From Phyllobates terribilis (lineage: Eukaryota), in contig NW_027362767.1 of the NCBI RefSeq assembly GCF_046119375.1, positions 265,794,001 to 265,858,000 of the forward strand: 64,000 nt of DNA. Reading direction: 5' to 3'. Numbering within the stretch: position 1 is the first letter of the stretch; every line of letters begins with the position of its first letter. This document shows positions 1 to 63,009 of the stretch, one piece after another. Position numbers and translations under genes: made by a program. A model generated the notes under the pieces. That model did no database searches and was not told the DNA's origin. It saw only the letters and a list, made by a program, of their open reading frames with translations.

Positions 1-540
1 ACTACCACCAAGGCTGTGCCAACCACCAAACTCCAGAACTGTACTACCACCAAATCTGTGCCAACTACCAAGCATCAATACAGTACTACCACCAAGGCTG
101 TGCCAACCACCAAACTCCAGAACTGTACTACCACCAAATCTGTGCTAGTACCACCAATACAGTACTACCACCGAGAATGTGCTAACTACCAAGCATCAAT
201 ACAGTACTGCCACCAAGGCTGTGCCAACCAAACCCCAGTACTGTACCGCCAGCAAGACTGTGCCAACTACCAAGCATCAATACCATCATGACTGTACCAA
301 CCACCAAGCATCAATACAGTACTACCACTGAGGCTGTGCCAACTACCAAGCATCAATACAATACTATCACCGAGGCTGTGCCAACTACCAAGCATCAATA
401 CAGTAATACCACCATGACTGTACCAACTGCTGAGCCAATACAGTACTACCACCCTATCTGGGCCAACCAGCAAGAATAAATACAGTGCTACCACCAGGAC
501 TGTGCCAACCACCAAGCTCCAGTACCATACTACCACCATT
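1..540. repeat. Degenerate 36-42 bp ACC/ACT-rich tandem repeat in a PAXX intron
   Basis: Recurring units such as ACTACCACCAAGGCTGTGCCAACCACCAAACTCCAGAACTGT. Lies downstream (minus strand) of the PAXX donor at 585. Confidence 0.8.
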
Positions 541-585
541 GTGGCCAGTTGTCTTCTCAGATGCCAATGGTTAACAAGAACTTAC

Positions 586-1941
586 CGCAATTTCTCCAGC
601 AGATCATGAGACGTTAGATTACGGACCGCGTCCTGGAATACAGAAGTCAGATGTGAAGAGAAGCGTGATACCACTCGGCAGGTGCACGATGAGGTCACTA
701 CTGGGAGGACAGTGATGTCATCTGTGTCACGTGACCAACATGGCATATTAGAATGCGTGAATGACAGCCACCTTACCCAGTCCTCCAGAGCCTCCTCTAC
801 GGGGTCCGTCCTCCACACTTCATTGGCGTTAGTCACACTGTGCAGAGAGGAGAAGATGAAATGAATAACGTCTGCAGATACACAATACATCAAATGGCCG
901 CACACGGGTTAGAGGCACCTGGTGGTGCTATCACTGTCATATGGCCATATAGTGTGGGAATAGCTATACCTCATACAGGATGGTGCCCACACAATGGTCA
1001 GAGGTTGCACACTGCTATTTTACATATTTTTTTTCCCCAGGCAGCACTGCCCTAAAGACTCCAGAGCCGTAACATCACAGGGCTGTAGTGGAAGCCCTGT
1101 ACAGGAGACTAATGCCACCGGCAGGACTACTTACAGCCTAGGGCGTATGCCATCCATTCCTGGCTGTCTAACCCTTTGATCAAGAGTGACCCCTATATGA
1201 TTACAGGAGACTCCCTTCCCCCGATCCAGATACCTATTAACCAGTTAACTCTATATAGATAGATATTACACACACAAATACACACACAAACAGATGCGAT
1301 AAGGAGCTGGGGTGTCCTTATACAGTCAGCCCTGGGGACTTAGACAGGACCCTTTAAGGGATTTTTAACCCCTTCGCCATAACTTTTTTGGGTTTTGTTT
1401 TTATGGTGATCGTTGTGCGGTAAATATCACCTGGCAGCACCATTCTCCAGGTGATTTCTGTGATATCAAAGGTAGAAGTATTTTTAAATTTAGCAGTTAA
1501 AAAAAAAATACAATTCAGAACCTTTAAAAAAATATTTGTGTCGCCATTTTCTGAGATCTGTACTTTTTTTTTTTTTTTAACATTTTTCCATCAATGGGGC
1601 CGAGTGAGGTCCAGTTTTTTACGCCCTGGGCTAGGACTTATACACATAGCGTATGGTTGCCAGAGTTATCCCCGACTTAACTCTTTGTGCACTTTTTTTT
1701 TTTTTCAACTCAACCGGGCAAGGACTTGGGACAGCTATAGTTAACCATCTGTACACCTTCCTCCCTCATTAATTATGGCTGCTATGCAACAAACAGCCCT
1801 GACAACATGGCCGCCCCCCTGCAGCCCTGGCATGGAGGTCACTCACTGGATCCTGGTGCCAGGCTGGATCTTACTGAGGCACAGGTACCGCTGGCCAGCA
1901 TGGCTCACACTGCACAGGCAGGACCAGGCCTCTGCGGCCAT
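586..1941 (-). CDS. PAXX: PAXX non-homologous end-joining factor (C9orf142), 5' part; continues beyond window start
   Basis: Exons 1941-1847 (ATG in GTCACCATGG Kozak; donor GTGAGT), 837-777 and 632-586, with phases 2/0/2 consistent. Product MAAEAWSCLCSVSHAGQRYLCLSKIQPGTRIHVTNANEVWRTDPVEEALEDWDAVRNLTSHDLLEKLR aligns with recalled human PAXX (LCTLP...RFVCYC; YVTDAAELWST; ...EDITPRFR). Human PAXX is at 9q34.3 near EDF1/MAMDC4. Confidence 0.8.
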
Positions 1942-1970
1942 GGTGACGTACAGGATCACTTCCTGCAGCA
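1800..1970. promoter_or_regulatory. Candidate promoter motifs around the PAXX start (YY1-like, CRE half-site, ETS)
   Basis: CAACATGGCCGCC near 1803, GTGACGTA near 1943, CACTTCCTG near 1957. Motif match only. Confidence 0.35.
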
Positions 1971-2549
1971 GGAAGAGGGAGGCCATAATGGGAGTGATCA
2001 GCCCTGGGAGGAGTCTGCAGGATTAACCCTTAAGACACAAGATAAAAGGCAGGCAGGAAAGTTTATATTGAGAGGATTTGTAAGGAGCTGACCTCCATCA
2101 TTGCCAGTGACCCTGGGAGAATGGGAGTTGTGGTCAATGATGGAGCAGATGGTGAGGTTTCCTGTCATTCACTTTTCTATATTTAACCCCCGCTGCACTG
2201 AAGAGGTAAAAAACATCACATAATTGTCCTGCGACTTTTCATACTCTAGGGTTACATTCACATCTGCCAGATTTTTTTTGCAAAAACAATTCTGCAGCTA
2301 TTAATCAATCCCAGTCATCTAAGTGAGGTTATCCCTGCAGCTGAGGCTGGCATTTAGGTACGCTTCATTCAGATGATGGTACAGATGATTCTGCTTCTAC
2401 ATCACCCGATCGTCAATTCTCACCGGATATCATGTAGGACAGGGGTGCGATACCTGCCAGACGCCACATCACCTCCATGGTTATCCCCCTGATGCTCTGT
2501 AGAAAAATTCTACGTTTTTTTTTTTCTATGAGCAGACGGATGTCACATT

Positions 2550-5432: not shown

Positions 5433-8400
5433 GCACCTCATGGTGACAGAAGAGCTAACAATTAAGACTGTAGTCATGGACAGCCTCTTGCCCCGGCTCC
5501 TCTCCCCGTTGCCAGACGAAGTGCAGGAATGCGTCGCCCTGTTGATGGGTGAAGTTCAGAGTCAATGTGAAGAATTGGTGGAGGCTTTGATAAAAGATCC
5601 TCAGTGTGATCAGTACCTGGCTGCCCTGTGCCGATTCCTGCACACCGCTAATATTCGGTAAGCATTATCCACTCCATATATTACAGGGTGGATCGTAGTA
5701 ATGCCAACATACATATCATGCACTAATAATACCGCCATGTGGTGCTTACATGAATGTACCATACAGTGATATTAATGAGTGGTATGGAGCTGGATACAGT
5801 TTTGGAGTAACCTGTCCAGGGTTTACTAGATCAGTAGAGGGTTCCCAGCGGATGGAACGGGCACGATAAGAGAACTTCTTCCTACCCCTTAACCACCTCC
5901 TTGTAGACTACACCATTGGGTCATGTCAGGATAAGTGAAGGCGATCCCCTACTATAATTGCGATCATAACAAGACGATATTATTAGACATTCTCTAGATT
6001 TGCCTCTCGCTCAATGCCAGTCAGCTGCCTTTCAGCACATACATTCATGTATTACTCCAGGGTGAAGGTAACATGACGGCGCTCCAATCCTGTACACTTG
6101 GCCTCATTAGACGAGTCGTAGAGAGGACATTAGTGGCTTTAACGCAGATTGTCCTCCAGATACACACATCAAACAAGCTGCGGATGAAGTGTACTCAGGG
6201 TGGAGGGTGACTCTGCTGCGGCCTGGACCTTTCGTTGGGGATCATAGCATAATAGCGAGGCTAAACATAATATATCCGCAGGGTAAACACATCCCTTAAG
6301 AAGCATGACAGATCCTCGGCAACCGAGCCTAAAATACATTGTAGGTTAAATAACAATCGCGGTCGAGCAAACACGTGCGACCAATGGGGAAAATGTCAAC
6401 GAGGTCGTGTTCACCCGCTGCTAACTGCTGGCCTCGGTCTTAGGAGGGAGGACGGTTCATCCCTATCTTTCTATTACTGCGAGCAACTGCAATGGCAGAA
6501 TTTCATAGCAAATTGGGAGAAAATCTCCGTCATTCACATAAAATTTACCCCCCCGGTGTATAATGTCTGGCCCCATCGCCCCCCTCCGGTGTATAATGTC
6601 CGGCACAACCGCCCCCCTAGTGTATAACGACCGGCCCCATCGCCCCCCCCCTTCCCTGGTGTATAACGTCCGACCACCCCATATGGACAATTATAGCTTC
6701 CGACTTTGTGGGAACAGTTTGGGGAAGACCCTTTTCTGTCCCCCGTGACTGTGCCCAGTGCATAAGCTCCATACAGACATGGGGGGGAGAACATGACCGG
6801 CTGCACAAAGCCCGGACCTCAGCCCCATCCAAGAATGGAGATTGTGAGCCCGGTCTCCCCCAACATCAGGGTCTGACCTCACAAATGCTCTCCTGGATGA
6901 AGGGGCAAAAATCCACACAGACTACCAAAACTTTGTAGAAGTCCTTCCCAGAAGAGCAGGGGTCATTATATCTGCATAGGGGAAGACTCCATATTATGTG
7001 TAGGGATGTAGGCTGGGTGGTCAAAGAAAACCCAGGAGGGGGCACATACTTTTTCGTGTACATTAGAATAGTGGGACGGTGGTTTGCAGATCGCACCCTG
7101 GTTACAGTCAGGGTCACCCTGTGTCAGTCTTTTCCTATGTGACCAGTCCGGGATTAGTGAGGGCTCTCTCTACGTTCTCAGTGATTGTGCTGGAAATCCT
7201 TCTGGTCTGCTTGTTTACATGCCCAGCCCCGCGGCCGCCTGTCTGTAATCCTGCGCCTTTCAGATCCGCTGGCACCTTTCCATTCCTGGCTCCACAAGTC
7301 TCCGCTTGCTTACAAAGTGTTACCCCAGTAACTGGTGAGCAGAGCTGGCTTCATGTTGTTTACCAAGAGCCTCTCCTCCCTGCGCCCGCCATGCAGAGGT
7401 GACTGAGGCCATCTACCCGCCTACATGCCCTAATAATACTGCCACCCCTGCACCGAGCATGGGGTGATATAAAGGGGTGATGCCGGGACCCCCGGGCTGA
7501 GTGATCAATACACACAAGTACCTCTGTGTCCATCCAAACATTGCACCAAGCAGCTGCAATGTATTATCTGCTATGTGCTCACTGTATGGCAGTATTATAC
7601 GGGCATTATACTGCACTGTATGGGGTTTCTATTTAGTACTGCAGATTCTGATATGATATGACTCCTGTTGTTGCAGCCTCTGCAGTAATGTTGCCTACAT
7701 TCTTGGCATGGTGGCGGAAGATCCCGGAGTTGCAATCATGTTGGTGAACCTGGCAGAAATAGCGACAGACTGGGACTTGCTGGGGGGACTGGGAGCGATG
7801 CTGCTATGGGATGATGCAGAATCTGTGATGAATGCAGCTGGTGCCCTGGGAACACTGGTGAGAGATGAGCCGGACTGCTGAGAGTGGGTGTCCAGACTGT
7901 GCCATAGGAATGTGGGCCCATAAAGTATCATTATATATGGGGCCTCTGGTATTATACTCCAGAGCTGCACTCACGATTCTGCTGGTACAGTCACTGTGTA
8001 CATGCATTACATTACTGACCCTGAGTTACATCCTGTATTATACTCCAGAGCTGCACTCACTAATCTGTTGGTGCAGTCAGGGCTGTGGAGTCGGAGTCGA
8101 GGAGTCGGTATAAAATGGACCGACTCCAACTCCTAAAATATATAATAAATTGGGTACAGTAGTTCAGTGCAGTTTGTGGGGAATATTTTTTCATAAGAAT
8201 TTGGGAAAGTTATGAAATGTCCTATAAATGTCTGTCCTATTCCTGATCTAAGGGTCTAGACTTTTAGCTGAGAGGAATCTGTGCTACAGTAAATTTATCA
8301 CTTACACATGAGCCGTGTATGAGGGAGTCAGAGTCGGTGTCATGGAAATTGAGGAGTCGGAGGTTTGGCTTACCAACCCCACAGCCCTGGGTGCAGTCAC

Positions 8401-11400
8401 TGTGTAAAAACATTGCATCACTTATCCTGTATTGATCCTAAGTTACATCCTGTATTATACTCCAGAGCTGCACTCACTATTCTGCTGGTGCAGTCACTGT
8501 GTACACACATTGCATTACTGATCCTGTACTGATCCTGAGTTACATCCTGTATTATACTCCAGAGCTACACTCACTATTCTGCTGGTGCAGTCTCTGTGTA
8601 CATACATTACATTACTGATCCTGTACTGATCCTGAGTTACCTCCTGTATTATACTCCAGAGCTGCACTCACTATTCTGCAGTTTCTGAGCTGACGCCCTG
8701 TTGCTCTCTTTGCTGCAGTGACTTTGGCAGGTTGTAGTTTTGCCGGTGTCACATCAGAAAGATCCGGTTACCAGTGCATTCTGTGGCAGGTAACTCCGAT
8801 CATTCAGTGATATGTTGCGGCTTCTTATGACTTTGCACCGTGTGTGTGAATACAGATCCAGTCGTGAGCCATGCGGTGGATGTGGGACGGTGATCAGACA
8901 TTGATGACTGAGCTGATGACATTTCTTCCTACAGGCGGAGAGCGGCCATGGCAGACATTGGCTCCTCTCCTCTGCAGATTCTGACTTCATCATCGAGAAC
9001 ATCACAAAACTCCTGGATTCTCCAGATGACTGGACCGCCAGCAACTGTGCCCTGGTGCTCGCCCGCATCTCAATGTGCCAGGAGGGGTGCACACGTCTCC
9101 TGGAGCATCCAAACTCTGACATAGTACTACAGAAGATAATGGCATCCCTCCATGTGGATGAGGCAGGTAAGAGAAAGAAAGAATCCAAGCATTGATACTA
9201 CCTACATCAGAGGCACCGCTGTGCCCCAAGATGCCAGCTAAGTGGCACTGTATACTCACAAAATAATACTGAAGACAGTGGAAATGCTGTGACTCTGCTG
9301 CTTGGGCTCTTGTATGATTTGCATTGACTTCTGTGGAGTACAGGCCTTGCTGCAGCTGTCACATTAGGTCACACTTGCCATCAGCTGCCACCTCTGGTGC
9401 CACGTTGTGTCGGCAATCTGTGGTTGTGGCGGCAATCTATGGTTGTAGCTTCCAGGTCAATGCATCTCCTCTCTCTCTTAGGCTGTGGTCTGAATGCGGC
9501 TTTTACTCTCGGACGTCTGTGCGACACGGACAGAGGCAGGAGACGGGTGCTGGCTCTGCAGGAAGCCGACAACATGGTGAGTGCAATTACCACACATTCC
9601 CAAAATTGCATTTACTTAGATTGTGACCCAAGTGTCAGGTCGCCTCTCCCCGGCCGTCCCCCGAGTGTCAGGTCGCCTCTCCCCGGCCGTCCCCCGAGTG
9701 TCAGGGCGCCACTCCCTGAAGTCTGCATGCCCTCTGCCCCTTCAGGAGTAGATTGCCGCTGTCACCTCTGGTAAAGTCATGTCTTCCCCTGATAAGTCTA
9801 GATCTGCAGCCTGGAGGCAATGATGTCCGGAGGAGATGCCGGCGGAAGCAGAAACGCTTGCTTTGCCCTCACGTGCCTTGCGACTAGCCCAGCTGGCCAC
9901 CAGCATGTCCTGAAGAGCCCGCACTTCCCACAGGTCCTGGAGACGCTCTGCCACCTCCTGCAGTCCAGCGAGCAGGACTCCTGCTGGTTTGCTGCCATGT
10001 AAGTTCTTCAGTTTCCCTTTGTTTTGCAGGCGCCACTTGAGTTTCACTTCACAAAGACACTGACTCCCGGACGTGGCCCTGGCACCGGCGCTGACGCCAA
10101 AATCACGCCACCATTCTGCAAATGTTGAAACTTATACTTGCTGACCCTCTAAGGTTTCCTCCATCAGATCGGATCATTAAATGGTTGCGATGCCACCTTT
10201 TACAATACCGCACCCTCGTTATCAGTGCCACATTTATAATATCGCACCCTGAGTATCAGTGCCACATAATCATCTTGGTGAGGATGCTTACACACAAATT
10301 TTTATTTCTAGAACTGTCAAGGGATTATCCAAGTTTCCTTCAGGAGTTGTGAGACTGCGGCAGCACCCAACGCTCGAAGCGATCCTAAAAGTAAGTGTCC
10401 CAGACCTGTGGTTAGGGGATGTGTGGGATCGGAGAAACATGGCGGCACCACAGCTGCCCGTTTACTACCCGGAACACTCGCCAGCTCTCCGGGGAATATC
10501 CAGGAGGCTCAGGGAAAGAGGAGGAATCTCCTGGACACCGCAGAAGCCTTCTGTAAATTGTCACTTTCTGAAGGTCTCTGGTGTGCGTTGCTGAGATACT
10601 TTGACACCGGACTGAGCCCCAGCATCCAGACGCACATTTAGGGTTGGGAAATTGGGGTTTAGGGGGATCATGGCGATGAAAAAAAGTAAGTGCAAGACCA
10701 CATCCTGAGATCTTCACTGTGTCATATGAGAACTAAGGAGGCCTCACCATTAATCTACATCTGCCATAGACGAATGCCCTGCCCCCTCTCACTGCTGTCT
10801 CTCCAGAGAGTCTCTGTATCTGTTGTCTCTATGGAAACCCCCCATAAATACTTTACTGGTAACGGTGCTGTCACCGATGAGTTTAATGGTGAACTAGTTA
10901 CCATGGAGACCATTGTCATGGATATTCCAGGAGAAAAGACAATTATATCAGCGGAGGACGCAGAAGGCCGGACTGATAGCGCCCAGGATGAATCCTGCAC
11001 ACATCGTACCTAGGTTATTTCAAGGGGGATTTTGTAACCGTAGTAGAAATGTTGCCGATTCCTAGTAAATCGGCGGTGAGTGAGCCAGGATGGGGGTCTT
11101 GGGGTCATATTGTAAATGTACATACGGTGATCAGCTGGAAATCTCAGCTCGGCATCTGGTGACAACGGCAACTAGAAAACAGGCTCAGATAAACCTCAAA
11201 ACAGTGGGTCTTGCGGGGTGTTGCCAGTATATGGCGGGCCTTGCGGGATGATCCCGGTACACGGTGGATCTTGCTGGGTGATCCCGGTACACGGTGGGCC
11301 TTGCAGGGTGTTGCCTGTATATGGCGGGCCTTGCGGGGTGATCCCGGTACACGGTGGGCCTTGCGGGGTGTTGCCTGTATATGGCGGGCCTTGCGGGGTG

Positions 11401-14400
11401 ATCCCGGTACACGGTGGGTCTTGCTGGGTGATCCCAGTACACGGTGGGTCTTGCGGGGTGTTCCCTGGTCTTGTGGGGTGCTCCCAGTACACGGTGGGTC
11501 TTGTGGGGTGCTCCCAGTACACGGTGGGTCTAGTGGCGTGATTACGGTACAAGGCGGGTCTTGCGGGGTGATTACCTTACAGGGCCGATCTTGCGGGTGT
11601 GTTCCCAGTATACAATGTGAAGGCATTGTGTGGATGTGACACGCACCATCTACCAAACATTGTACGGCCCTCCCTTCTCTCTCAGCATGGTAATGTTCGG
11701 TCACTCCTCTCTGTGATGCGCTGGGGTATTGCACTTTATTTGATTGCTTCTGAATATTGCAGCCTTTATATGTTACTTCCATGTATATTTTTTTTTTTTA
11801 TGTCCACAATAGAAAATTTCAGCATTGCATGTGGCCGGAGAGGAGCTGCTACAAGAGGTAGAGGTCACATTAAGGACCCTCCAGCGTCTCCCCCAGCCCG
11901 GGCCTCCTACAGCAAAGATCTTGGAGTCTGGCTCCGTTGTGGTGGCCTGGAAGGAATATAGACCCCACAGTGGCCTGACTGTCACTTACAGGTCAGAAGA
12001 GATTCATTAGTCCTCCATGCTGAGAAACTTATGCTCCAATCACATCCAAAGCTGCATTCCCATTTCCATTTTTTTTCACATTGTGGTCAGTCATGGGTTA
12101 AAACTAAGATACAGAGTCCAGACATACTGCAGACTTGGTCAGGGCAGCCGCTGTCTGGATCTTTACATTTTGCTGAAGCTAGAGAAGAAAATATTTAGAA
12201 TCAATAATTTTTCCTTATTTTTATATCATTTTTACACTGCGGTCCCATTTCCAAGACAAAGTTTTAAAAAAAAGAGCTGCTGCTATTCAGTTTGAATGCA
12301 GCTGTGGGTGTGACTGGAGTATATTCCAATATTAGTAAGTATAACTTTTACAAAGTTTCCTGAGCTCATGAACTATGAAGCAGGAGAGGAGAGCCCCCTG
12401 CCTCTGTCCCCCACACACGGTGTCCACTCCCTAATTTATGTGTTCCCCTTCTGTCCGCAGCCTGTATGATGGTGACCGGCTCCTTTACAGAGGACCTTCC
12501 TTCTCGCATGTCATACCTCGCTGCACCCCCGGCCACCATCCTCTGAAAGTTGTCCTGGAAACTGAAGGAGACCGTAGCCCGGCCAGCCCCCTCGCCCTGG
12601 TGACGGTGGAGGAGCCGCTGCCCGGATGCCCCACAGATTTCCAAGTCACGGGACGCACGGTCACAAAAGTAAAGTTGTCCTGGAACCCGCCGGCCGGCTC
12701 CGGCCCAGGGATTAAATATGCGGTGTATAGAGAGGACCACCTTGAGGAGACCACCTCCGATGTGACCTGTATTGTGGCCGGCCTGGCCCCTGCCACTTCG
12801 TACACCTTCAGCGTATGTTCCTGCAACTCCAGGGGGCACAGTCCAAGAGTCGCTGTGGTCACCCGGACTATGGACGGAGGAGACCACGCTCCGGACAGAC
12901 TCACGGTCTACGTGGTCGGGCGCAGCGAAATGTTCATCACCTGGGAGGGGCCCAAGGACCCCGTTGGCAGGTTTTTCAATTACGAACTGAGCCTGAACGG
13001 GAAGTCTGTGTATCTAGGGACAGAGCGCTCGTTCACCGCCCGGCGCCTGACGCCCAGCACTGAGTACACCTGCACTGTATGCTCCATCACCAGCGAAGGC
13101 CGCCACGAGAGCCGCCCTGTCACCAAGAGGACCGCCAGGGATGAATACACCAACCTAAACAAGTATGTGGCTTTCCACCCACGCCGGGTAAGATACATAC
13201 ACGGCTCATACACCCAGCCCCGCAGTTATGTCAGCGACATGATCAAGATTTTCATCCTCTGGATGTAAATTAAGAAAAAAACAACTAAATTCTCCATTCG
13301 CTGACAGCAAGCAGAGATATTGTAGAGTAAGGAAGGCGATTAGAAAGTTGAATGTTTTTTTAAGCCCATTATCCCCTTAATGACTGGCAATAACCCTTGC
13401 CATGGCGGTCATTAAAAGGTAGGTGATAACTTGCTTTTTGGTGGGCTCTGAGATGCCACATCTGTATGGAGGGGTGGCCACGTCTGAATGAAGGGGTGGC
13501 CACATCTGCTGCACATTTCTTTGCTCATTGTCTATGGGACGGTCAGGGGGAAAAAACGAGCGCTTTACTCCGCTATCTCCGGAAATGAATGAAACACCGC
13601 TCCATTACATCGGGGCATATCAGAGCCCTGTTTTGGGATCGGAGGGGGTCCCTGTGGTCGGACCGTCGACAATAAGATTCTAAGGGGCCTAATTACACAG
13701 CACCCTGTTATTACCATGGAATAATCGCTGTATGGGTGTCCCCTCCCGCCCGGAGCAGGAGCTCGGCTCCCTAATGATTACCAAGTTGCTGCTCCGCGAT
13801 CGAAGGAACTTCCAATCCCTGCTGTTTATCCTTTTCATTGCCATGGTCAAGCTTGACTATGTCATGCTTAAAAAGGTCTCGGTTTCCCTTCCCTCCCGAT
13901 CACACCAACGGGGACCTAAGAAAAGACGCAGAGCTGAAATGCTGAAAAAGAAAAAGCGTAAAAAGAAAAGATGCAGAGCTGAAATGTTAAAAAAGAAAAA
14001 ACGTAAAAAGAAAAGACGCAGAGCTGAAATGCTAAAAAAGCAAAACCATAAGGGGGAAAAAAAATTGTTGGTCATTAAATGGTTAATACCCGGTCACATA
14101 TCCCCCCCCCCCATCTTCTCATATCAATTAGCATTAATCCCAGCAGTGGTTTCCAATAAGAAATCTGATTGCGTATAATCCCCTCACATCCACTTTAAGA
14201 ATAAGCCTCCATCCATAAAGCAGGCGAGGATTAATCCGTCATCTGGATCAGACTGTGAAAATGATCCAGATTCTACCAGATGGATGTTATTACAGAGCCA
14301 CACTCGACGTCGGGCTGCGTTTACTGGTTTCCTGCAAAAAAATTAAAATGAATTATGCTCTGGAAACCGTCAGCAAGCAGGATTTTTAACAAAGACGTTT

Positions 14401-17337
14401 TAGGAAACTTTCCTAAGTATAAGAAATGGTATAAAACAATCCCCGCGTCCTGTCCATCACAGCGCTCCAATCACCTGGCCAACGTGCGCTTGTCGCCTAA
14501 ATGGGGCCATCACAGGACCACACACCCTTACATTTGAATCTACCCCAGAGACATGGCTGCACATTTAAAGGCACAGCACTCATAATAAATAAATAAATCT
14601 TCCATGCAAAAGAGAGTGCGTTCTCAGTCCTTCCACACTTGCTGATGGTTTCCATTTCTCTCTAGTGCAAAGGTAAAAAAGAAAAATACCTAAACACAAC
14701 GTGACAAAGACAAAAAAAAAAGATTCATGACCGTAGAGGCAGATATAGCAAGGACCTGATCTGATATTTTTTTTGGGATAGAAACCAAATAGGGGGCTCT
14801 CGCCACACATCGGGCGCACCACCGGCAGAGGCGACCGATCAGAGCGAGAAACCGTCCAGGAGAAGCTCTCTCACCAAGAGCCAGGGCGTGCGGATGCTGG
14901 TGAGCAAGCAGACGAGCAGAACCAAACGAGACAACAAAGCCGTCTCCACCAGAACACGGTAGGTGACCATCACGGTGCAGCATCGGGGATACAACTATCT
15001 GGGGATGACGTATTCTCTTTTCTGTGTAGGAGAGATTCCGATGTATCCTGGACGGCAGAAACCAACGACTGCCCTGTGACCGGTCAGTCACTTGTGATCA
15101 AGGTAAAAGTGTGCAAATGTACAGCTTGTAATCCTGTGGGGAGAAAATAATCTGCAGCACAAGTGCTGGAGAATCCGGCCTTTAAGGGGTTGTCCTAGCT
15201 GTATTCTGGTATGATATGGAAGCATAGAGGGAGTTACTATCTCATACCCTTTTTTCTTTACTTTAACCAGCCTCCTTCACTCAGCGACGTAACGCCGGGA
15301 CTATCGAGCAAAAACATCAAAAAGGAGAACAAAAAATGTCTCGAACAGACAGAAAACTGCTACGACAAGTCAGAGAGGGATCCTGCTGCCATCGCCGGCC
15401 CGAAGGTACAACATAAAGTTATAATCATTTATACCATTTATCTGTCATCTGCGTATTATATGTGAGCAACTCCAGAAAACTTACTCCAGTCACATCCAGA
15501 GCTGCACTCAAAATTCTGCTCACGTGGTCACACAGTCTGTGGACTAGGAGGTGCTTTCAATGGCATCTCACAAAATGCTGTGCCCTGCTTCAAAGGAACT
15601 CTGCTCAGTTGTTTTGGCTGCAGCTTTGGATGTGATTGGAGGAGACAACTTTTTTTTAAATGAAATAAGTAAATTTCTAGAAGAAAAAAAAAAGTAGATT
15701 AGAGCCAGATATTTGCAATTTTATGACGGGAATAAAACACGGACAGGATGCACACAGGTTTTGGAAGTGGACACTGCTGGATTTTGGTCGTCACCATTAC
15801 GTTTTTTATTGTTTTGCAGCCTGCAAAGCAGAAGACCCCGGACATCACCCCAGTCCAGACCACCACAGCTGCAGTCCAGACCACCACAGCCGACACCAAA
15901 AAGCCACAAAGCGCGTCTGGATTTCGGCTGACGCCTATCGCCTCTCTCTGTAGCCTGGAGCCCGAATATTTACTGAGCAGCAGGGCCAAGACAGACAGTG
16001 ATCTGACCAGGCCGGACCACCCGGACGGGCCCGCACCACCCAAGTGGGTTTACTGCAGACACATATAACATGTATACACTGCAGGGTCTGAAGGGCGGAC
16101 TACTCCTCTGTGTGCGGACCTGGAGTGGGCTCCATCGAGCACCCAGTATGCACTGATGAGAGTTGTTGTCCCGTTCCTGCTGACTATAACTGCTGCTGAA
16201 TTTGCACTGCTGTAAACTACTTTCTCCTCACTTTAGCAAAAAGCTGCTGGGATCTGTAGTTCCAAAGATATATAAATTGGTTGACAGATACTATTTTTTT
16301 TCTATTCCAGCCTCTTCCAGGATTGTTCCAGGGTGTCGGATAAAGACAGATGCATCACTCAGAAGAAAGCGCTGCAGCCGGTGCGAGGTGAGGCGTCCGC
16401 ATGCAACCACCTAAAATCTGTCCAAAATATTCAACCAAATTGGTTCAGTTCATAGTCGTCTCTCCGGCTTCCATTCCCGGCAGATCCCATCGTGCGGTAC
16501 AGACACAGGAGCCTGAAGGCCAATGCTTGGGACTTCACGGACGCTTTAACCAGCAGAGAGAAAATACTGTGCAAGTTTTCTGCCACGTGTCCCCTGACTC
16601 CTACCGAGGAAGCCTTGTCCAACCTATCCAACATGTCCCAGGGCCTGGTGCGCAGAGGCAGCCTCTTATCGCGCCGTGCTGGTGAGACGCCATGTTTGTT
16701 CACAGCAAAAAAAAAGTTACTTCTTTTATGATGGCAGCCTGTGAGACGTGTTGCAGTAGCTGTTGGGCAGTGGGGTATGGCCGGAGTTCTTCCCGGGGTG
16801 GACCGATATGGAGGTCTGATCACGTAATGTTACGGGCCTGAGGCTGCACTGCTGGGAGATTCTGACATTTTGCCTTTCCGTTCCCTATGGTGTGGTCATA
16901 GAGACCCCAAATCAACACTGTCTTTGTGCACACAAGACCCAGATCCGTAGGGGACGCGTTCTGAATGGTTATAATGCCTCCGTGTTTTCCTCTCCAGGTC
17001 ACAGTGACGGCAGACGTCATTCCTGGTCTCACCTCCGCTCCGAACTGTCATCTCTCCACGATCTGAAGAGCATGGAAGCAAAATCTGTGGAATCGCTGCG
17101 AGGCCCAAGGTAGGAGAAAAGAGATCCGCTGGCACCTGCCAAAAAGTTGCCAGGCATGCAAGACCCCCAATAAAAAAAATAAATAGAAAATTGTTGTTTT
17201 TATTTCTTAGGAGCAATCCATCTGTATCCAGAACTTTCCAAAAGGATGTTCACGTCCTAATTGCAGACTCAGGAGTGACCTTCCGCCTCCCGCCTGCCCC
17301 CGTCCGCCTCCCTCAGAGGGTCCATCCCCACCACTGA
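5433..17337 (+). CDS. Uncharacterised armadillo-repeat + 3x fibronectin type III protein with Ser/Arg/Lys-rich tail (at least 1001 aa)
   Basis: Sixteen GT-AG exons with continuous phase: 5433(ATG 5440)-5657, 7677-7857, 8935-9166, 9482-9576, 9802-9998, 10312-10390, 11813-11991, 12461-13162, 14782-14958, 15030-15102, 15271-15405, 15820-16043, 16311-16387, 16484-16681, 16998-17109, 17211-17337(TGA). Total 3006 nt from ATG 5440 with no internal stop. ARM helix-3 motifs: SNVAYILG, MNAAGALG, SNCALVLA, LNAAFTLG, RNACFALT, WFAAITVK. FN3 motifs: LSWNPP..Y..GLAPATSYTFSV and ITWEGP..Y..LTPSTEYTCTV. The 5' end is unresolved. Confidence 0.85.
6545..6685. repeat. Short ~32 bp tandem repeat (about 4 copies)
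   Basis: CCCCCGGTGTATAATGTCTGGCCCCATCGCC-like units. Confidence 0.6.
6690..6860 (+). mobile_element. Highly degenerate Tc1-like transposase fragment
   Basis: TTTGGGGAAGACCCTTTTCTG...GACTGTGCCCAGTGCATAAG...GCACAAAGCCCGGACCTCAGCCCCATC resembles the Tc1 FQHDxAPxH...WPAQSPDLNPIE region with frameshifts. Confidence 0.5.
7945..8685. repeat. 97-bp satellite family copies (TATTATACTCCAGAGCTGCACTCACTATTCTGCTGGTGCAGTCACTGTG...), interrupted by a MITE
   Basis: The same unit occurs at about 24600-24830 (both orientations) and as a clean array at 63010-63462. Confidence 0.8.
8078..8389. mobile_element. hAT-superfamily MITE (312 bp)
   Basis: Perfect 11-bp TIR CAGGGCTGTGG...CCACAGCCCTG; perfect 8-bp TSD GGTGCAGT at 8070-8077 and 8390-8397. 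Confidence 0.85.
9626..9722. repeat. 33-bp tandem repeat, about 3 copies
   Basis: CCCAAGTGTCAGGTCGCCTCTCCCCGGCCGTCC units (PSVRSPLPGRP periodicity in the ORF track). Confidence 0.8.
11205..11610. repeat. 30-bp minisatellite with 60-bp dimeric structure
   Basis: CCCGGTACACGGTGGGCCTTGCGGGGTGTT alternating with GCCTGTATATGGCGGGCCTTGCGGGGTGAT. Confidence 0.85.
13369..14086. mobile_element. Probable TTAA-type (piggyBac-like) non-autonomous element containing a 48-bp A-rich repeat x3
   Basis: Left end CCCCTTAATGAC (13373) and right end GTCATTAAATGGTTAA (to 14086) form imperfect inverted termini. Internal repeat at 13920-14045. Confidence 0.5.
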
Positions 17338-17988
17338 CATCACTCACCTCCCCTTTAATTTTAGGGTAACCCAACACCTATACCTCCCATAATCGGGGGC
17401 AGGGATCCGTGTGCTCTGGTGTCACCAGCTGCTGTAACCCGTCATTACAGGAACAAAGCGACTCGAAGGTGGCCGGTGATGACTGCAATAGCTTGAACCA
17501 GAGCTAGAGCAATGCCAAAAGCAAGAAGGGGCTTCTAGAGGAACCTGCACTCAATGTCTCTCCGGTACCCCAATATAAATCCTGGGTAACAATATGGCTG
17601 TCACCCAACTTTCCCAGGTTCCTGAAATATACATATGAATGAACAAATAATTCTGGGCATTCCAAGAATATGGCATCCGCTCAGCCTGGCAGAATATAGG
17701 GTTCCCCATCCAGCACCTGAACACTTGTTGGGGAGAGGGGGAAGGGGCAACAGGACATTTGGCCAAGGAGCCCAGGATTATTCCACAGCGACTTCGACCT
17801 GCTGCAGAGAAGACAGAAGGTGCTGTGATCTTGTGCTGCCACCAGACGGCACTGTGGAGGCATAATCCCCCAGAACAGCCTCTTATCCGTGCGCGGCTTC
17901 ATTACCATCATAATGGACATTTCCAGCTTTGGAGATGATTATTTTACAAATGCAACAAAAATTAGAAGGAACTTAAATAGCAAAAATA

Positions 17989-18368: not shown

Positions 18369-21263
18369 TCAGACCCTGATAGCGGGAGGGGGCAGGATTC
18401 CGATCTCTTCTCTCAGGGACGCCACCGTCTGCTCCCATCGATTCTCATAGTAAAAACTAAGAACGCAGCGGGCATCGCGCCCACTCTGCACGGCCCAGGG
18501 CACCAAATCAAGCAATTTCCTCTTCCTCCTGAAAAGAAAAAAAAACCTATTATACGCAGGGTGCACCGGATATCGTTACAGCTGACCACTATGGGTGTGA
18601 ATAAGGCCCAATCCATGGGGAGGTGATCTATGTAAGATTGTGGGGGGTCCTGGATGCCACTACCCCATTCACAGTCTATGTGAGTGGTGGTATAGACCTC
18701 CTGCTTCTCACAGCTGAAGATTCGCTACAGCTGCATCCAGTCTAAACAATCTTCCCAGGGCAAAACACATGAGCAAAAGTAATCTCTCTCTCCTGTCCGG
18801 GCAGTTCCTGTATATAGAGGACCCTAGTAAGAAGTAGTTATATATGGGGCAGGTGATAACTACTAGATCAGTGTGGGTCTGACCACTGAGACCCCAAATG
18901 ATGACAGACTTCATTACCCTGAGTGAATGGGCCCACTTCCTGATGATCTTCTGTACGGAATCAAGAACATTCCCATTCACTGACAGCAAGCAGAGTTTGT
19001 GAAAGTCTATTAGAAAGTTGCAAAACTTTACTTAATAATTAGCCCAAAAACTCTTTGCTCTTTAGCCCATCCTGACAGGGCATCGTTGTAAAGACCATGC
19101 TACCGGGAGGGTTTGGGTACAAGAGCTGTGCCCGTCTGCGGTGGGCGATATGCCACTGTGCTCCTACCTGGCGCTGAGGCGTAGAGGTCCAAACACAGCT
19201 CCCAGCATGCACATTGGCAGCCCGGTCTGCACGGCTTCAAACCACTTCACTACGACTTCCCCTGAAGGGAGAACAGAACGTGATCAGCAGCGCCACAACG
19301 TCTTATCTGCCTCTGGACGGCTCGAGATGCCCCCGGACAGCTCAGATCTCACCTAGCATGTTGGTGGGCATCCCCAGCAGGGTGTGCAGGAGGTCGTGCA
19401 CTTCTCGGTATCGCTGAGCCACATACGCCAGCTCCTCGTCATCCACAAACTTCACCGGCATGCGGGTGTCAGGGGTGACACGCTGCAGCAAACGCGACAT
19501 TCATTCATTAGAGGCGATACAAATAAAAAGATCGGCAGGCTGCGCACACTTTGGATATGATTGGAGTAGAAGACCTGACAAGTCGATCATCATCATCCCC
19601 TAAATCACATTGTTAAAGTGACAGCGCACTTACATTGACATCCAGGAACCTGGCGTACTCTCTGCCGAACGTCCCATCAGGCAGCGCTCTGAACCGCTCC
19701 ATATCCAGGGTAGACATGCGGATACGGGGGCGCTCCCTGAGGGGAAAAGGCAGAGCCAGCGGATGAAGAATCCAAACAGCTGACTTATACTACTTCCGTT
19801 ACATCCAGAGCTGCAATCACAATGCTGCTGCCAGCGAAACTGGCTACTGAACATCTCGTAGTGAACAAGCAGCAGAGCAGAACTTTGCACGCAGCTCTGG
19901 ATGTAATTGGAGCACAAGATGAAATGTGACACCCTATATATCATGGGATAACGCACTGTAGGACCTGCATCCCCTCTGGGTCTTTGCTCATTTTTTCGTA
20001 CAGGTTCTGCAGAGCCAGGGTGCCAGTGGTTTCCCCGAGAACGGCGATCATATCTGCAGATTTCAGAGAGAAACATAAGAATTATTGTCAACCATGTGTG
20101 AAAGCAGAAGTGAAACAGCAACTATGGATCAAACAGCGCTGTGCCCCACTATATACTGTACAATGCCATGCTGGGAGCCGCTATAATCTGCATGGTGCCA
20201 TGCTCCGCTCCACACTGTGCGCTGCCACACTCTAGGGTGCGAGGCGCCATCCTCCTCTCCACACACTATCCTGTACTTCACCTACCTCCGTGGGCCAATA
20301 GCTGCACAATTATATAAATTAAAAAATATGTAACTAACTAGTGCTAATTAAGAATCCTACCGTTTAATGTCTGCAGCTCCTGTGCAAATCGATGCATCAC
20401 CCTGGTTACAGACAAACCCTCTGTAGTCTGACCCTACAGTCCTTCTCCCTGACCAAATAAGTTATTAGCATGAAATAAGTGACAGATGAAAGACGAGTCA
20501 GACTACACAGGACTTGTCCATAGTCTGTAACCATCGAGCTGCATAGATGTGCACAGGGGCTGCAGACACAAAACGGTAGGGGCTATTGTGTGTGATCAGA
20601 GTGTCGGGCAGATTATTACCATGTCTGTAGGGGTCATATAAAGACATAAAGGCGGAGCCGGCGGACAGCAGCAGCTTCTGCAGCGCGGTGGTGGGAATGT
20701 GGTGTGGGTACAGGACTGGCGGTTCCCGGATCTGCGAGATGGATTCATGGTCTCCGGGGGGATCCACTGATGCAATGTGATGGGTCTGGGTACAGCGGAC
20801 GCCTGTGAGGAGAGACAGTGACAGATCAGGATCAAACTAGACATGGGGGTCCCAGGGGCCACCGATCTCCACACATGTACGGCCCTGTGATCTTGCTGCT
20901 GAAATGGCCGGGATTGAAGATGTCTCTGATCCCGGGCATTTAATACCTTAGATGCTGCAGCACTAGTGATCAGAGCAGGTGACCGGTCCTCAGCATCACT
21001 CTGCACTAAATCCCCTCTTAGACCTCAAGAAAAAATGTAAAAAAAAAAAATATATAAATCTAAAAAAAAATTAAAAGTAAGAAAAACAAAACTGTTTTCT
21101 CATTGGAATCTCTGCCGGCTTTGGCCCCTCTGCAGAGAGATCATAGGAGCCCCAGGGTCAGGCTGAAGGTTATAGGGACTTCACCTTGGAGGAGGGAAGG
21201 GAAACCTGCAGCAGCTCTCAGGGTCCTCCAAGCAGGAGATGGCAGCAGCCCCCTCACCAACAT
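18369..21263 (-). CDS. COQ4: Ubiquinone biosynthesis protein COQ4, mitochondrial (281 aa)
   Basis: Exons 21263-21185, 20802-20620, 20053-19957, 19736-19634, 19482-19353, 19261-19168, 18528-18369 (846 nt). Contains [38 protein letters not shown] (HDxxH..E metal motif), [17 protein letters not shown] and YYENRWEQ. Internal exon sizes 97/103/130/94 match recalled human boundaries. Exon 1 ([20 protein letters not shown]) looks like a mitochondrial presequence and is the least certain exon. Confidence 0.95.
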
Positions 21264-61059: not shown

Positions 61060-61750
61060 GAACTCTACCTACAAGTGTTAGATTGGGTTGAGATCTGGGG
61101 TCTGTGGGGGCCAATCTGGCACCTCTACTTCATTGTTATTGAACCATTTCTTCTCCAATCTCGACATATGCTCCGAGTCGTGTTCCAGCAGGACATCGAC
61201 TCGGAGTATATGTACTAAGTAATTTGTCCTGTAGGATACTCACATATAGACCACCATCCATCCTGGTCAAGTATCCAATGCCATTGGCTGTGACACAACC
61301 CCTTATCATCAGGCTTCCTCCATCGGACTTGACAGTTCCTTCAATTTCTCCATCCCTTAGCCCCTTTTCCCTTTGTATATTCCAGACCCATTTGCACCCA
61401 TCAGAGCCTAGTCTATTGACTTTCATCTTATCGCTCCAAATCACCCATTTCCAGTCTTCTACTGTCCACCTTTTGTACATTTTTACAAACTCGAGCCAAC
61501 GCTTCTCATGACATTGAAGTCGAGGCTTCTTCACCATTTTTCGGGCCACCATTTCAGACTTGTGTAACGTGCGTCACACGGTGCTTGCATGGACCTCTGT
61601 GATCCCCTATTATGAAGCATACGAGCCTCCTCCACTGATGTGTTTGTCGTACCAGAACTGATAGACCTTGTGATGAGCCGATTTGTTGACTCCTATATTT
61701 TGCCTGGACGTCCACCTCTTGGCTTTTGAATGGATGGACAGACTTCATTT
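61060..61750 (-). mobile_element. Decayed Tc1-like transposase fragment
   Basis: ORF 61136..61552: KKPRL...WTVEDWKWVIWSDKMKVN...TVKSDGGSLMIRGC...GIGYL...YVSILQDKLL. Confidence 0.85.
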
Positions 61751-62946: not shown

Positions 62947-63009
62947 CTGCAGAGGTAACAGAAAGAAACAGAGCTGTGGATGATAAGCTGAAAGTGCAAT
63001 AGTCCAGAG

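What the first reader, a model, noticed from the sequence alone, without database searches (positions are those of the whole stretch)
5433..17337. Unrecognised ~1000-aa armadillo + fibronectin-III + disordered-tail protein
Seen: 16 exons join with canonical splice sites into a 3006-nt stop-free CDS, which is very unlikely by chance. About 350 N-terminal aa carry six helical repeats with the N-[AVC]-x-x-x-L signature. Three FN3 domains follow (first one degenerate), then about 370 aa of low-complexity basic tail. No signal peptide or TM segment is visible, so it is probably intracellular. Knowledge: I recall no named human gene with ARM repeats followed by tandem FN3, and none at this position in the human 9q34 block. 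Inference: a scaffold or adaptor, possibly lost in mammals. A ciliary or flagellar role by analogy with ARMC3/ODAD2/RSPH14 is speculation. It may already exist as an unnamed LOC model.
Basis: partly seen in the sequence, partly recalled or inferred. Interest (0 to 1): 0.85.

Follow-up and report, generated by a model that had tools for sequence, protein, structure and literature searches.

The report
Unnamed ancient armadillo–FN3 scaffold gene
This is a real, expressed 16-exon frog gene for a 1001-residue intracellular protein (armadillo repeats, three fibronectin-III domains, long disordered tail) that is conserved from corals to crocodiles, is missing from mammals, birds, lizards/snakes and most laboratory model animals, and has never been named or studied.

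Summary
Sixteen GT..AG exons (5440-17337, + strand) give a 3006-nt CDS of 1001 aa. It is letter-for-letter identical to an existing database entry, "uncharacterized protein [Phyllobates terribilis]". Spliced RNA contigs from four runs in two studies confirm all nine junctions from exon 7 to exon 16.

AlphaFold2 gives a canonical armadillo solenoid (aa 1-356) joined to three FN3 domains (362-620), all at pLDDT above 90. The tail (623-1001) is disordered and basic (pI 9.9).

Orthologues with this architecture occur in cnidarians, rotifers, lophotrochozoans, echinoderms, hemichordates, amphioxus, tunicates, lamprey, sharks, non-neoteleost fishes, coelacanth, lungfish, amphibians, turtles and crocodilians. 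None was seen in mammals, birds, squamates, neoteleosts, zebrafish, arthropods or nematodes. Every entry is "uncharacterized" or mislabelled (Usherin, SAPC2, TMEM141), and literature searches found nothing.

The most likely role is a non-enzymatic cytoplasmic adaptor. Five consecutive repeats carry a conserved Asn ladder, and two Arg are invariant on the groove-lining helices. This points to binding of an extended peptide. The tail carries conserved RRxS-type kinase motifs. This mechanism is inferred, not shown.

The ciliary idea rests only on generic fold similarity. The tissue of expression is unknown. The finding is a genuine "dark" family, already annotated, and moderately interesting.

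The parts
5433..5657 (+). First coding exon (exon 1). Acceptor at 5432/5433, ATG at 5440, donor GT at 5658. Encodes aa 1-73 (N-terminal cap helices and start of ARM repeat 1).
   Evidence: translation identical to P0268
7677..7857 (+). Exon 2, aa 73-133 (ARM repeats 1-2, Asn77 and Asn125)
   Evidence: ARM model pLDDT 95
8935..9166 (+). Exon 3, aa 134-211 (ARM repeat 3 and start of repeat 4; W166, N170, invariant R177)
9482..9576 (+). Exon 4, aa 211-242 (ARM repeat 4; N215, invariant R222)
9802..9998 (+). Exon 5, aa 243-308 (ARM repeats 5-6; N260, invariant W304)
10312..10390 (+). Exon 6, aa 308-334 (ARM repeats 6-7; invariant R324)
11813..11991 (+). Exon 7, aa 335-394. Holds the last ARM helix (to aa 356, window 11878), a linker, and the first strands of FN3-1 (from aa 362, window 11894).
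   Evidence: junction 11991|12461 seen in 4 RNA runs; structure
12461..13162 (+). Exon 8, aa 394-628. Holds the rest of FN3-1 (to 12614), FN3-2 (12621-12875), FN3-3 (12885-13139) and the start of the tail (13146 onward).
   Evidence: Pfam fn3 E 5e-23; structure; junctions at both ends in RNA
14782..14958 (+). Exon 9, aa 628-687 (tail; RRSS at aa 654)
   Evidence: junctions 13162|14782 and 14958|15030 in RNA
15030..15102 (+). Exon 10, aa 687-711. Follows a 71-nt intron and holds the conserved R-[RP]-x-S-x-x-S motif (RRDSDVSW, aa 687-694).
   Evidence: motif conserved from frogs to cnidarians
15271..15405 (+). Exon 11, aa 712-756 (poorly conserved tail). The donor at 15406 is the one used.
   Evidence: RNA junction 15405|15820 in 4 runs
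15820..16043 (+). Exon 12, aa 757-831. Holds a conserved tetrapod island, RLTPIASLCSLEPEYLL...RAKTDSD (aa 790-817).
16311..16387 (+). Exon 13, aa 831-857
16484..16681 (+). Exon 14, aa 857-923 (RYRHRS at 861, RRGS at 913)
16998..17109 (+). Exon 15, aa 923-960 (RRHSWS at 928)
17211..17337 (+). Exon 16, aa 960-1001 plus the stop codon (17335-17337). The 3' UTR continues more than 600 nt past 17400.
   Evidence: contig X1 record 4 extends 602 nt beyond 17400

Best explanation
Shown. The locus is an intact, transcribed, correctly spliced protein-coding gene of Phyllobates terribilis. It is already annotated but unnamed. It encodes a cytoplasmic, non-enzymatic protein with three modules: an acidic canonical armadillo solenoid of about 7 repeats (aa 1-356, pI 4.8), three tandem FN3 domains (aa 362-620) that AlphaFold2 models with the ARM domain at uniformly high confidence, including the linkers, and a 379-aa basic disordered tail. 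It belongs to a metazoan-wide family with one conserved architecture, found from cnidarians to crocodilians. The family has been lost, or is at least unannotated, in mammals, birds, squamates, neoteleost fishes, zebrafish, arthropods and nematodes.

Inferred mechanism. The protein acts as a scaffold or adaptor. The concave groove formed by the H3 helices binds an extended peptide of a partner. The binding residues would be an Asn ladder (N77, N125, N170, N215, N260), working as in importin-alpha, beta-catenin and designed ARM proteins. Invariant R177 and R222, seven residues after two of these Asn, would act as 'charged buttons', which suggests an acidic or phosphorylated ligand. The FN3 triplet provides a second rigid interaction platform or spacer. 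The tail is a regulatory region carrying short conserved motifs, mainly basophilic-kinase sites (four RRxS, two RxRxxS). One of them, R-[RP]-x-S-x-x-S, is conserved across Metazoa. These sites plausibly control partner or 14-3-3 binding.
For: Gene reality.
- The 16-exon, 3006-nt model is identical to P0268.
- Nine junctions are seen in spliced RNA contigs of 4 runs from 2 studies.
- Within-species RNA variants are 4 synonymous and 3 nonsynonymous.

Fold.
- The ARM-only model has pLDDT 95 and pTM 0.91.
- The full model has ARM plus 3 FN3 at pLDDT above 90, including the linkers, and the tail below 50.
- An independent AlphaFold DB model of a 558-aa urchin paralogue fragment (A0A7M7T0G5) superposes over ARM plus the first two FN3 domains with TM 0.80.

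ARM assignment.
- The family profile hits designed ARM proteins (E 1.9e-11), beta-catenin (2.8e-8) and importin-alpha (5e-6).
- Foldseek against PDB gives TM 0.72-0.77 to designed ARM-peptide complexes and importin-alpha.

Groove conservation.
- H3 helices have mean column conservation 0.80, with 39 of 83 positions at 90% or more. H1 scores 0.57 and H2 0.54, across 47 orthologues from frog to jellyfish.
- The ladder Asn are kept in 40-47 of 47 sequences. R177, R222, W304 and R324 are kept in 47 of 47.

Other points.
- No catalytic domain: Pfam finds only fn3 plus sub-threshold Arm/HEAT.
- Intracellular: no signal peptide or TM segment.
- Tail motifs and their conservation.
- Distribution.
Against: - No partner, localisation or phenotype is known for any family member.
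- The tissue of the RNA runs is not on record.
- The gene was not found in the held marker tables of a Xenopus laevis cell atlas, some of which are truncated.
- High H3 conservation partly reflects core packing, so it is not proof of a ligand groove.
- The Trp of the importin-alpha WxxxN motif is present in only one repeat, so the binding chemistry is uncertain.
- AlphaFold2 docks no tail segment onto the folded part.
- Pfam Arm and HEAT hits are mostly below the curated cut-offs.
- The kinase-site reading of RRxS rests on consensus motifs only.
- Absence from mammals, birds and squamates is absence of annotated proteins. Genomic remnants could not be searched.
Confidence: 0.6

Rival explanations
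1. Motile-cilium or flagellum protein. The ARM domain would work like RSPH14/RSP14, ARMC3 or ODAD2, as an axoneme-associated module, and the gene would be expressed in multiciliated cells or sperm.
For: The top Swiss-Prot fold neighbour is Chlamydomonas RSP14 (TM 0.77), and ARMC3 and RSPH14 are also listed. No orthologue was seen in nematodes, which lack motile cilia.
Against: - The similarity is generic: about 16% identity, with Vac8, plant U-box ARM proteins, ARMC8 and importin-alpha scoring equally.
- The family is absent from mammals, birds and Drosophila, which all build motile axonemes. All hits seen are metazoan, unlike core axonemal proteins.
- There is no RFX X-box above chance and none near the first coding exon, although the true promoter was not located.
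- The gene is not in the held Xenopus cell-atlas marker tables.
Confidence: 0.12
2. Auto-inhibited importin-alpha-like adaptor. The basic tail (pI 9.9) would fold back as a pseudo-ligand into the acidic ARM groove (pI 4.8) until a kinase or a partner releases it.
For: The ARM domain and the tail carry opposite charge. The nearest solved structures are ARM proteins holding basic peptides in the groove. The tail has short conserved basic motifs.
Against: - There is no IBB domain, and no K-[KR]-x-[KR] NLS-like motif in the tail.
- Only one WxxxN is present.
- The invariant groove residues are Arg, which would repel a basic ligand.
- AlphaFold2 leaves the whole tail at pLDDT below 50.
Confidence: 0.1
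3. Structural cytoskeletal or sarcomere-associated protein. Intracellular tandem FN3 domains are typical of muscle and cytoskeletal proteins (titin, myomesin, MyBP-C, FSD1/2). In this reading the FN3 triplet is the main functional part and the ARM domain is an anchoring module.
For: Three tandem FN3 domains sit in a protein with no signal peptide. Language-model feature neighbours include FSD2 fragments, but at a low score of 0.65.
Against: - The ARM domain, not the FN3 part, is the most conserved module (88% against 82% to Rhinoderma; about 40% frog to mollusc).
- There are no Ig domains, coiled coil or SPRY.
- The atlas score of 0.65 is within the range of chance.
Confidence: 0.08
4. Annotation artefact, pseudogene or retro-copy signal rather than a functional gene.
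For: The runs are only guessed to be RNA ('RNA?'). Intron 8 is also covered at low depth.
Against: - Nine canonical introns are precisely removed in high-depth contigs of four runs.
- The 1001-codon frame is intact.
- The architecture is conserved in more than 100 species from Cnidaria to Crocodylia.
- The fold is modelled at pLDDT 95.
Confidence: 0.01

Closest known systems
Importin-alpha and designed armadillo repeat proteins (dArmRP, e.g. PDB 5mfd, 5aei, 4rv1, 4pvz)
   Same: Canonical three-helix ARM solenoid of similar length (Foldseek TM 0.72-0.77; profile E 1.9e-11 to 5e-6). Asn is at the same H3 position in consecutive repeats, the feature that holds an extended peptide backbone in those structures.
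   Different: No IBB domain. The WxxxN motif is in only one repeat. Invariant Arg replace the acidic pockets. Three FN3 domains and a long disordered tail follow. Sequence identity is about 16%.
Beta-catenin / plakoglobin
   Same: The family profile matches beta-catenin ARM repeats (E 2.8e-8). It shares the concept of basic 'charged button' residues on H3 that bind acidic or phosphorylated extended ligands (established knowledge for beta-catenin K312/K435). Here the candidates are R177 and R222.
   Different: About 7 rather than 12 repeats. No GSK3/CK1 degron region or transactivation tail. Only about 50 residues align well. The FN3 module has no counterpart.
RSPH14/RSP14, ARMC3, Vac8, plant U-box (PUB) ARM domains, ARMC8
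   Same: Nearest predicted shapes (TM by the query 0.68-0.81; human and mouse RSPH14 only about 0.5) in Swiss-Prot/AlphaFold DB and the ESM Atlas.
   Different: Identity is 15-18%. Each has a different domain context (radial spoke, EDR1-peptidase-like, myristoylated vacuole adaptor, U-box E3). None has FN3 domains. The resemblance is at the level of the ARM fold only.
Other intracellular 'repeat + FN3' proteins such as ANKFN1 and FANK1 (recalled from memory, not tested)
   Same: A solenoid repeat module followed by FN3 in a cytoplasmic protein with no enzymatic domain.
   Different: Those use ankyrin rather than armadillo repeats, have one FN3 rather than three, and are retained in mammals. 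No sequence relationship was seen in any search.
Usherin, FNDC1/FNDC3, PTPRQ, PTPRS, NrCAM (names given to orthologues by automatic annotation)
   Same: FN3 domains only.
   Different: Those are secreted or membrane proteins with a signal peptide, TM segment and other domains. This protein has none of those features and has an ARM domain instead. The names are mislabels.

Membership tests
Armadillo-repeat superfamily (Pfam PF00514 Arm / ARM-type fold) | Tandem ~42-residue three-helix repeats forming a right-handed superhelix | tested here: met
   AF2 model with 21 helices in H1-H2-H3 triplets, pLDDT 95. Foldseek TM 0.72-0.77 to solved ARM proteins.
Armadillo-repeat superfamily (Pfam PF00514 Arm / ARM-type fold) | Sequence match to ARM repeat models | tested here: met
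   The family profile hits designed ARM (E 1.9e-11), beta-catenin (2.8e-8) and importin-alpha (5e-6). Single-sequence Pfam Arm hits stay below the cut-off (14-17.5 bits against 20.6) and HEAT_2 passes only in Biomphalaria.
Fibronectin type III (PF00041) | Significant match to the fn3 model; seven-strand beta-sandwich | tested here: met
   fn3 E 5e-23, 81.6 bits against a cut-off of 25, two stretches in the frog and three in the shark, urchin, amphioxus, snail and tunicate orthologues scanned. Three beta-sandwiches at pLDDT above 90.
Importin-alpha (karyopherin-alpha) | N-terminal IBB domain | tested here: not met
   No IBB hit in Pfam. The N-terminus is a helical cap.
Importin-alpha (karyopherin-alpha) | Arrays of WxxxN on H3 forming major and minor NLS sites | tested here: not met
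   Only one WxxxN (W166-N170). The other ladder Asn are preceded at -4 by R, E, G and G.
Beta-catenin / plakoglobin / p120 family | 10-12 ARM repeats with family-level sequence similarity over the whole domain | tested here: not met
   About 7 repeats. The best aligned stretch covers only profile positions 93-141.
RSPH14 / radial spoke protein 14 | Orthology-level similarity; ARM-only protein of about 350 aa; radial spoke location | tested here: not met
   16% identity and fold-level similarity only, equal to Vac8 and PUB. The protein is 1001 aa with FN3 domains. Location is not testable here.
Usherin (USH2A) | Signal peptide, laminin-type domains, many FN3 repeats, C-terminal TM segment | tested here: not met
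   No laminin domains in Pfam. No signal peptide or TM segment. Only three FN3 domains.
The unnamed metazoan ARM-3xFN3-tail family (LOC100485040 in X. tropicalis, LOC581522 in S. purpuratus) | Collinear full-length similarity with ARM at aa ~1-350 and the FN3 triplet at ~360-620 | tested here: met
   Identical to P0268. 77% identical to the Rhinoderma protein over the full length. ARM identity is 50-53% to turtle, shark and sturgeon and 37-46% to molluscs, echinoderms and cnidarians. Profile scores of 886-1417 bits.

The most novel reading that the evidence does not exclude
The family is the core scaffold of an undescribed, ancient metazoan signalling or cell-structural module. That module has escaped study because it was independently discarded in mammals, birds, squamates, neoteleosts, zebrafish, flies and worms. 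Its conserved ARM groove would recognise a specific phosphorylated or acidic peptide of a partner that shows the same loss pattern.
Probability: 0.15. Interest if true: 0.75.

Novelty: new variant of a known kind. Interest (0 to 1): 0.5.

Why it matters
A protein that has kept 37-46% identity in its ARM domain between frogs and molluscs, echinoderms or corals is under strong, long-standing constraint. Despite this it has no name, no Pfam family of its own and no literature. It is missing from every major genetic model except Xenopus, sea urchin, amphioxus and some tunicates. That makes it a clean example of conserved 'dark' biology that mammal-centred annotation cannot reach.

Xenopus (LOC100485040 and LOC108699880) offers a direct route to a first functional study. 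The repeated independent losses could be used for phylogenetic profiling to find its partners.

For genome annotation, the family's members are widely mislabelled (Usherin, SAPC2, TMEM141, PTPRQ, FNDC3) or fused to neighbouring genes. A dedicated family model would fix this.

Tried and rejected
- Literature. Four full-text searches found no paper. They used 18 gene, protein or locus identifiers from frog, urchin, amphioxus, oyster, Capitella, Lottia and alligator, plus 6 descriptive phrases. A first broad search gave only irrelevant proteomics tables.
- Expression by cell type. One Xenopus mucociliary single-cell paper has no supplements held. The X. laevis cell-landscape paper's 12 held tables do not contain the gene's identifiers.
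- RFX X-box scan. It gave 10 matches against 9.6 expected and none near the first coding exon, so it is uninformative, and the promoter was not located.
- dN/dS. The DNA of the Ranitomeya and Phyllobates loci could not be fetched because the assembly files are too large. No second frog CDS was therefore available.
- Earlier scan notes. There are none for this place or these words.
- ESM Atlas feature search. It returned only the protein's own cluster (326 members) and chance-level ARM or FN3 clusters.
- An initial conclusion I withdrew. From I first took teleosts to lack the gene. Searches showed many non-neoteleost teleosts have it. The word-indexed search had simply missed these more divergent sequences.
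- Alternative splice choices (exon 11 donor at 15418 or 15369, exon 13/14 at 16380|16456, exon 16 acceptor at 17213) were rejected by the RNA junctions.
Full report

The + strand between 5.4 and 17.3 kb holds many short open stretches whose translations look like helical repeats and FN3 domains. The largest, 12438-13268, matches Pfam fn3 with E 5e-23.

An exhaustive phmmer of that exon against 1.8 billion representative proteins gave two kinds of hit. One kind was giant multi-FN3 proteins. The other was about 30 proteins of 600-1400 aa, each matched once at residues ~390-630. The best of these, P0005 from the frog Rhinoderma darwinii (81% identity, 1004 aa), served as a tblastn guide.

I enumerated GT/AG sites at each junction and required an open frame. 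This gave 16 exons, all GT..AG. Its 1001-aa translation is identical to P0268, 'uncharacterized protein [Phyllobates terribilis]'. The annotated gene span in assembly GCA_046119375.1 is 11,898 nt, the same as 5440-17337. The window is therefore from the golden poison frog, and the gene is already annotated there without a name.

**2. Is it expressed and spliced as modelled?**

Eight public runs of the same organism, from two studies, hold 42-62% of the sampled words of 11800-17400. I laid the contigs of four of them on that stretch. Nine joints appeared, each a GT..AG skip of 469, 1619, 71, 168, 414, 267, 96, 316 or 101 nt. These are exactly introns 7 to 15 of the model, seen in all four runs at word depth 85-305.

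This settles the doubtful points: the unusually short 71-nt intron 9, the exon-11 donor at 15406 (not 15418), and the exon 13/14 pair 16387|16484.

Intron 8 is also covered at depth 10-18, which is either pre-mRNA or a minor retained-intron form. Two contigs carry 1355 nt upstream of exon 7, 353 nt more than the upstream CDS. An acceptor sits at 5432/5433. One contig runs 602 nt past 17400, which marks the 3' UTR.

They are supported by three things: gap-free collinearity with orthologues (88% identity to Rhinoderma over aa 1-345), identity to the deposited model, and a pLDDT of 95 for the encoded domain.

Seven exonic variants between individuals split into 4 synonymous and 3 nonsynonymous. 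This is weak evidence, but it points toward constraint.

**3. Anatomy of the protein**

AlphaFold2 on a 47-sequence alignment of the N-terminal 345 residues gave pLDDT 95.1 and pTM 0.91. The model is all-helical, with H1-H2-H3 triplets.

The full-length prediction on a 58-sequence alignment shows:
- the ARM solenoid, aa 1-356;
- three beta-sandwiches at 362-445, 448-532 and 536-620, all above pLDDT 90 including the linkers;
- a tail, 623-1001, that is entirely below pLDDT 50.

An independent AlphaFold DB model of a 558-aa sea-urchin paralogue fragment (A0A7M7T0G5, LOC105441372) superposes on ARM plus the first two FN3 domains with TM 0.80. This suggests a fixed ARM-FN3 arrangement.

Composition differs by module:

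| Module | pI |
|---|---|
| ARM | 4.8 |
| FN3 triplet | 8.2 |
| Tail | 9.9 |

The tail is 16% K+R and 30% S+T+P. There is no signal peptide and no transmembrane segment.

In invertebrate orthologues Pfam detects it directly.

**4. What kind of ARM domain?**

A profile of the family's ARM region hits designed consensus ARM proteins (E 1.9e-11), beta-catenin (2.8e-8), plakoglobin and importin-alpha (5e-6) among solved structures.

By shape, the nearest solved chains are designed ARM proteins holding (KR)n peptides, and importin-alpha (TM 0.72-0.77). The nearest predicted models are RSP14, Vac8, plant U-box proteins, ARMC3, ARMC8 and RSPH14. All sit at 15-18% identity. The domain is therefore a generic canonical ARM solenoid and not a member of any named ARM subfamily.

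Within the family the groove-lining H3 helices are far more conserved than the others:

| Helix class | Mean column conservation | Positions at 90% or more |
|---|---|---|
| H3 | 0.80 | 39 of 83 |
| H1 | 0.57 | 14 of 58 |
| H2 | 0.54 | 10 of 79 |

Five consecutive H3 helices carry Asn at the same position, kept in 40-47 of 47 orthologues. R177 and R222, seven residues after two of these Asn, are invariant, as are W304 and R324.

In importin-alpha, beta-catenin and designed ARM proteins such an Asn ladder hydrogen-bonds the backbone of an extended peptide (established structural knowledge). That is the basis for proposing a peptide-binding groove here. The Arg pair suggests an acidic or phosphorylated ligand. 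This step is inference.

**5. The tail**

Across 30 vertebrate orthologues the tail is poorly conserved (mean 0.2-0.45) except for short islands:
- RTRRDSxVSW (aa 685-694);
- RLTPIASLCSLEPEYLL...RAKTDSD (790-817);
- ALQPVRDPIVRYRHRSL..W (851-872);
- RRHSW (928-932);
- GVTFRLPP (980-987).

The first island aligns across Metazoa as R-[RP]-x-S-x-x-S. The others are tetrapod- or frog-specific. The tail has four RRx[ST] and two RxRxx[ST] motifs and no classical NLS. This is the pattern of a disordered regulatory region with basophilic-kinase sites.

**6. Distribution**

A profile search returned 139 proteins with E of 1e-20 or better. Cluster look-ups, a teleost query and an alligator ARM query added more.

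Together they show the family in these groups:
- Cnidaria (Pocillopora, Stylophora, Acropora, Sanderia, Rhopilema);
- rotifers;
- molluscs, annelids, nemerteans, a brachiopod and a bryozoan;
- echinoderms, including a crinoid, and hemichordates;
- amphioxus and tunicates (Styela, Clavelina);
- lamprey, chimaera, sharks and rays;
- bichir, sturgeon, paddlefish, gar and bowfin;
- eels, tarpon, herrings, carps, characins, catfishes, salmonids and a mudminnow;
- coelacanth and lungfish;
- caecilians, salamanders and frogs;
- turtles and crocodilians.

No mammal, bird, squamate, neoteleost, Danio rerio, arthropod or nematode appeared.

Three results make this absence credible:
- The exhaustive search would have listed a mammalian orthologue of turtle-like similarity. 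The turtle scored E 2e-72.
- Alligator and turtle ARM domains are 70% identical, so a bird orthologue should have topped.
- The cypriniform query found eleven cypriniform species but not zebrafish.

The caveat is that only annotated or predicted proteins were searched. Decayed genomic remnants and unassembled GC-rich regions, which are common in birds, could not be examined.

**7. Synteny**

The annotation around P0268 reads: CLIC-like (+), PAXX (-), this gene (+), COQ4 (-), EDF1 (+). The - strand from 32.7 to 51.4 kb carries several MAM-domain exons and a terminal TM segment, which is MAMDC4-like. In Ranitomeya the gene also lies between PAXX and COQ4.

Two chimeric database models point to further neighbours in other species. 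One joins the gene to SAPCD2 (Polypterus) and the other to TMEM141 (Pristimantis).

**8. Function**

Nothing is known experimentally for any family member. Literature searches on 18 identifiers and 6 phrases found nothing.

The domain content (ARM, FN3, disordered tail, no catalytic domain) and the conserved groove make a cytoplasmic adaptor or scaffold the best-supported reading.

The ciliary hypothesis has only generic fold similarity in its favour. Against it, the gene is lost in mammals, birds and flies, which all build motile axonemes.

An importin-alpha-like autoinhibition by the basic tail is conceivable from the charge pattern. It is disfavoured by the invariant Arg in the groove, the absence of NLS-like motifs, and the lack of any docked tail segment in the model.

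The tissue source of the RNA runs is not on record. The gene's identifiers are absent from the held marker tables of one Xenopus cell atlas.

**9. Verdict**

- The interpretation (unnamed, adaptor-like, lost in mammals, probably present as a LOC model) is supported.
- The gene is not new to databases, but the family is uncharacterised and its ARM-3xFN3-tail architecture is not that of any named family.
- Interest is moderate. This is a well-defined, deeply conserved 'dark' gene with an accessible model (Xenopus), but there is as yet no hint of a surprising mechanism.

Noticed in passing
window 1-1986 (-), 18369-21263 (-), 21958 onward (+): According to the deposited annotation the flanking genes are PAXX (- strand, upstream, head-to-head with this gene), COQ4 (-) and EDF1 (+, MBF1/HTH_3 domains). 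A CLIC-like gene lies further upstream. PAXX and this gene may share a bidirectional promoter region.
   Followed up: partly
window 32685-51425 (-): Several exons with MAM domains (Pfam E 1e-6 to 3e-9) and a C-terminal exon with a transmembrane segment. This is a MAMDC4/endotubin-like gene, consistent with 9q34.3 synteny.
   Followed up: partly
window 13133-14811: Intron 8 is covered by RNA contigs at about 5-10% of exon depth. Read-through from exon 8 would add 35 codons and stop at 13266-13268. The product would be a tail-less ARM+FN3 protein of about 660 aa, similar in length to the ~700-aa shark models. It could equally be plain pre-mRNA.
   Followed up: no
window 15353-15539 (intron 11): Word depth rises to 176-473 here, with many chimeric, non-canonical joints and loose ends at 15482-15484. 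This is probably a dispersed repeat transcribed elsewhere in the genome.
   Followed up: no
window 11204-11606 (intron 6): A minisatellite of 30-nt units (12.6 copies, 77% match) that creates long spurious ORFs on both strands.
   Followed up: no
window 46632-50483, 53664-56585, 44340-45854, 22499-23829: Large tandem arrays: 36 nt x 108 copies; a G-rich 31/22-nt array of about 2.9 kb (GC skew 0.76) that produces 1000-aa artefactual ORFs on the - strand; 41 nt x 37 copies; 59 nt x 22.5 copies. Smaller arrays lie at 30302-31152, 40136-40498 and 41864-42446.
   Followed up: partly
window 8390-8679 and 63003-63464: The same ~97-nt tandem unit occurs in intron 2 of this gene and again 54 kb downstream. 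It is probably a dispersed satellite or transposon-derived repeat.
   Followed up: no
window 56876-57163 (-), 52879-53163 (-), 61136-61552 (-): ORFs that read like Tc1/mariner transposase fragments (for example ...DNDPKHTSK...QSPDLN...). This is judged from the translation only. The one ORF tested against Pfam gave no hit at E below 0.01.
   Followed up: no
window 29830-29972: A run of 143 N (assembly gap or masked). It was left as it is.
   Followed up: no
orthologues P0032, P0162, P0006, P0262, P0367, P0071, AFDB A0A813U4Q5: Family members are named Usherin/USH2A, SAPC2, 'TMEM141 protein family', PTPRQ, PTPRS-like, FNDC1-like and 'Hemoglobinase' in public records. These are FN3-driven mislabels or fusions with neighbouring genes.
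   Followed up: partly
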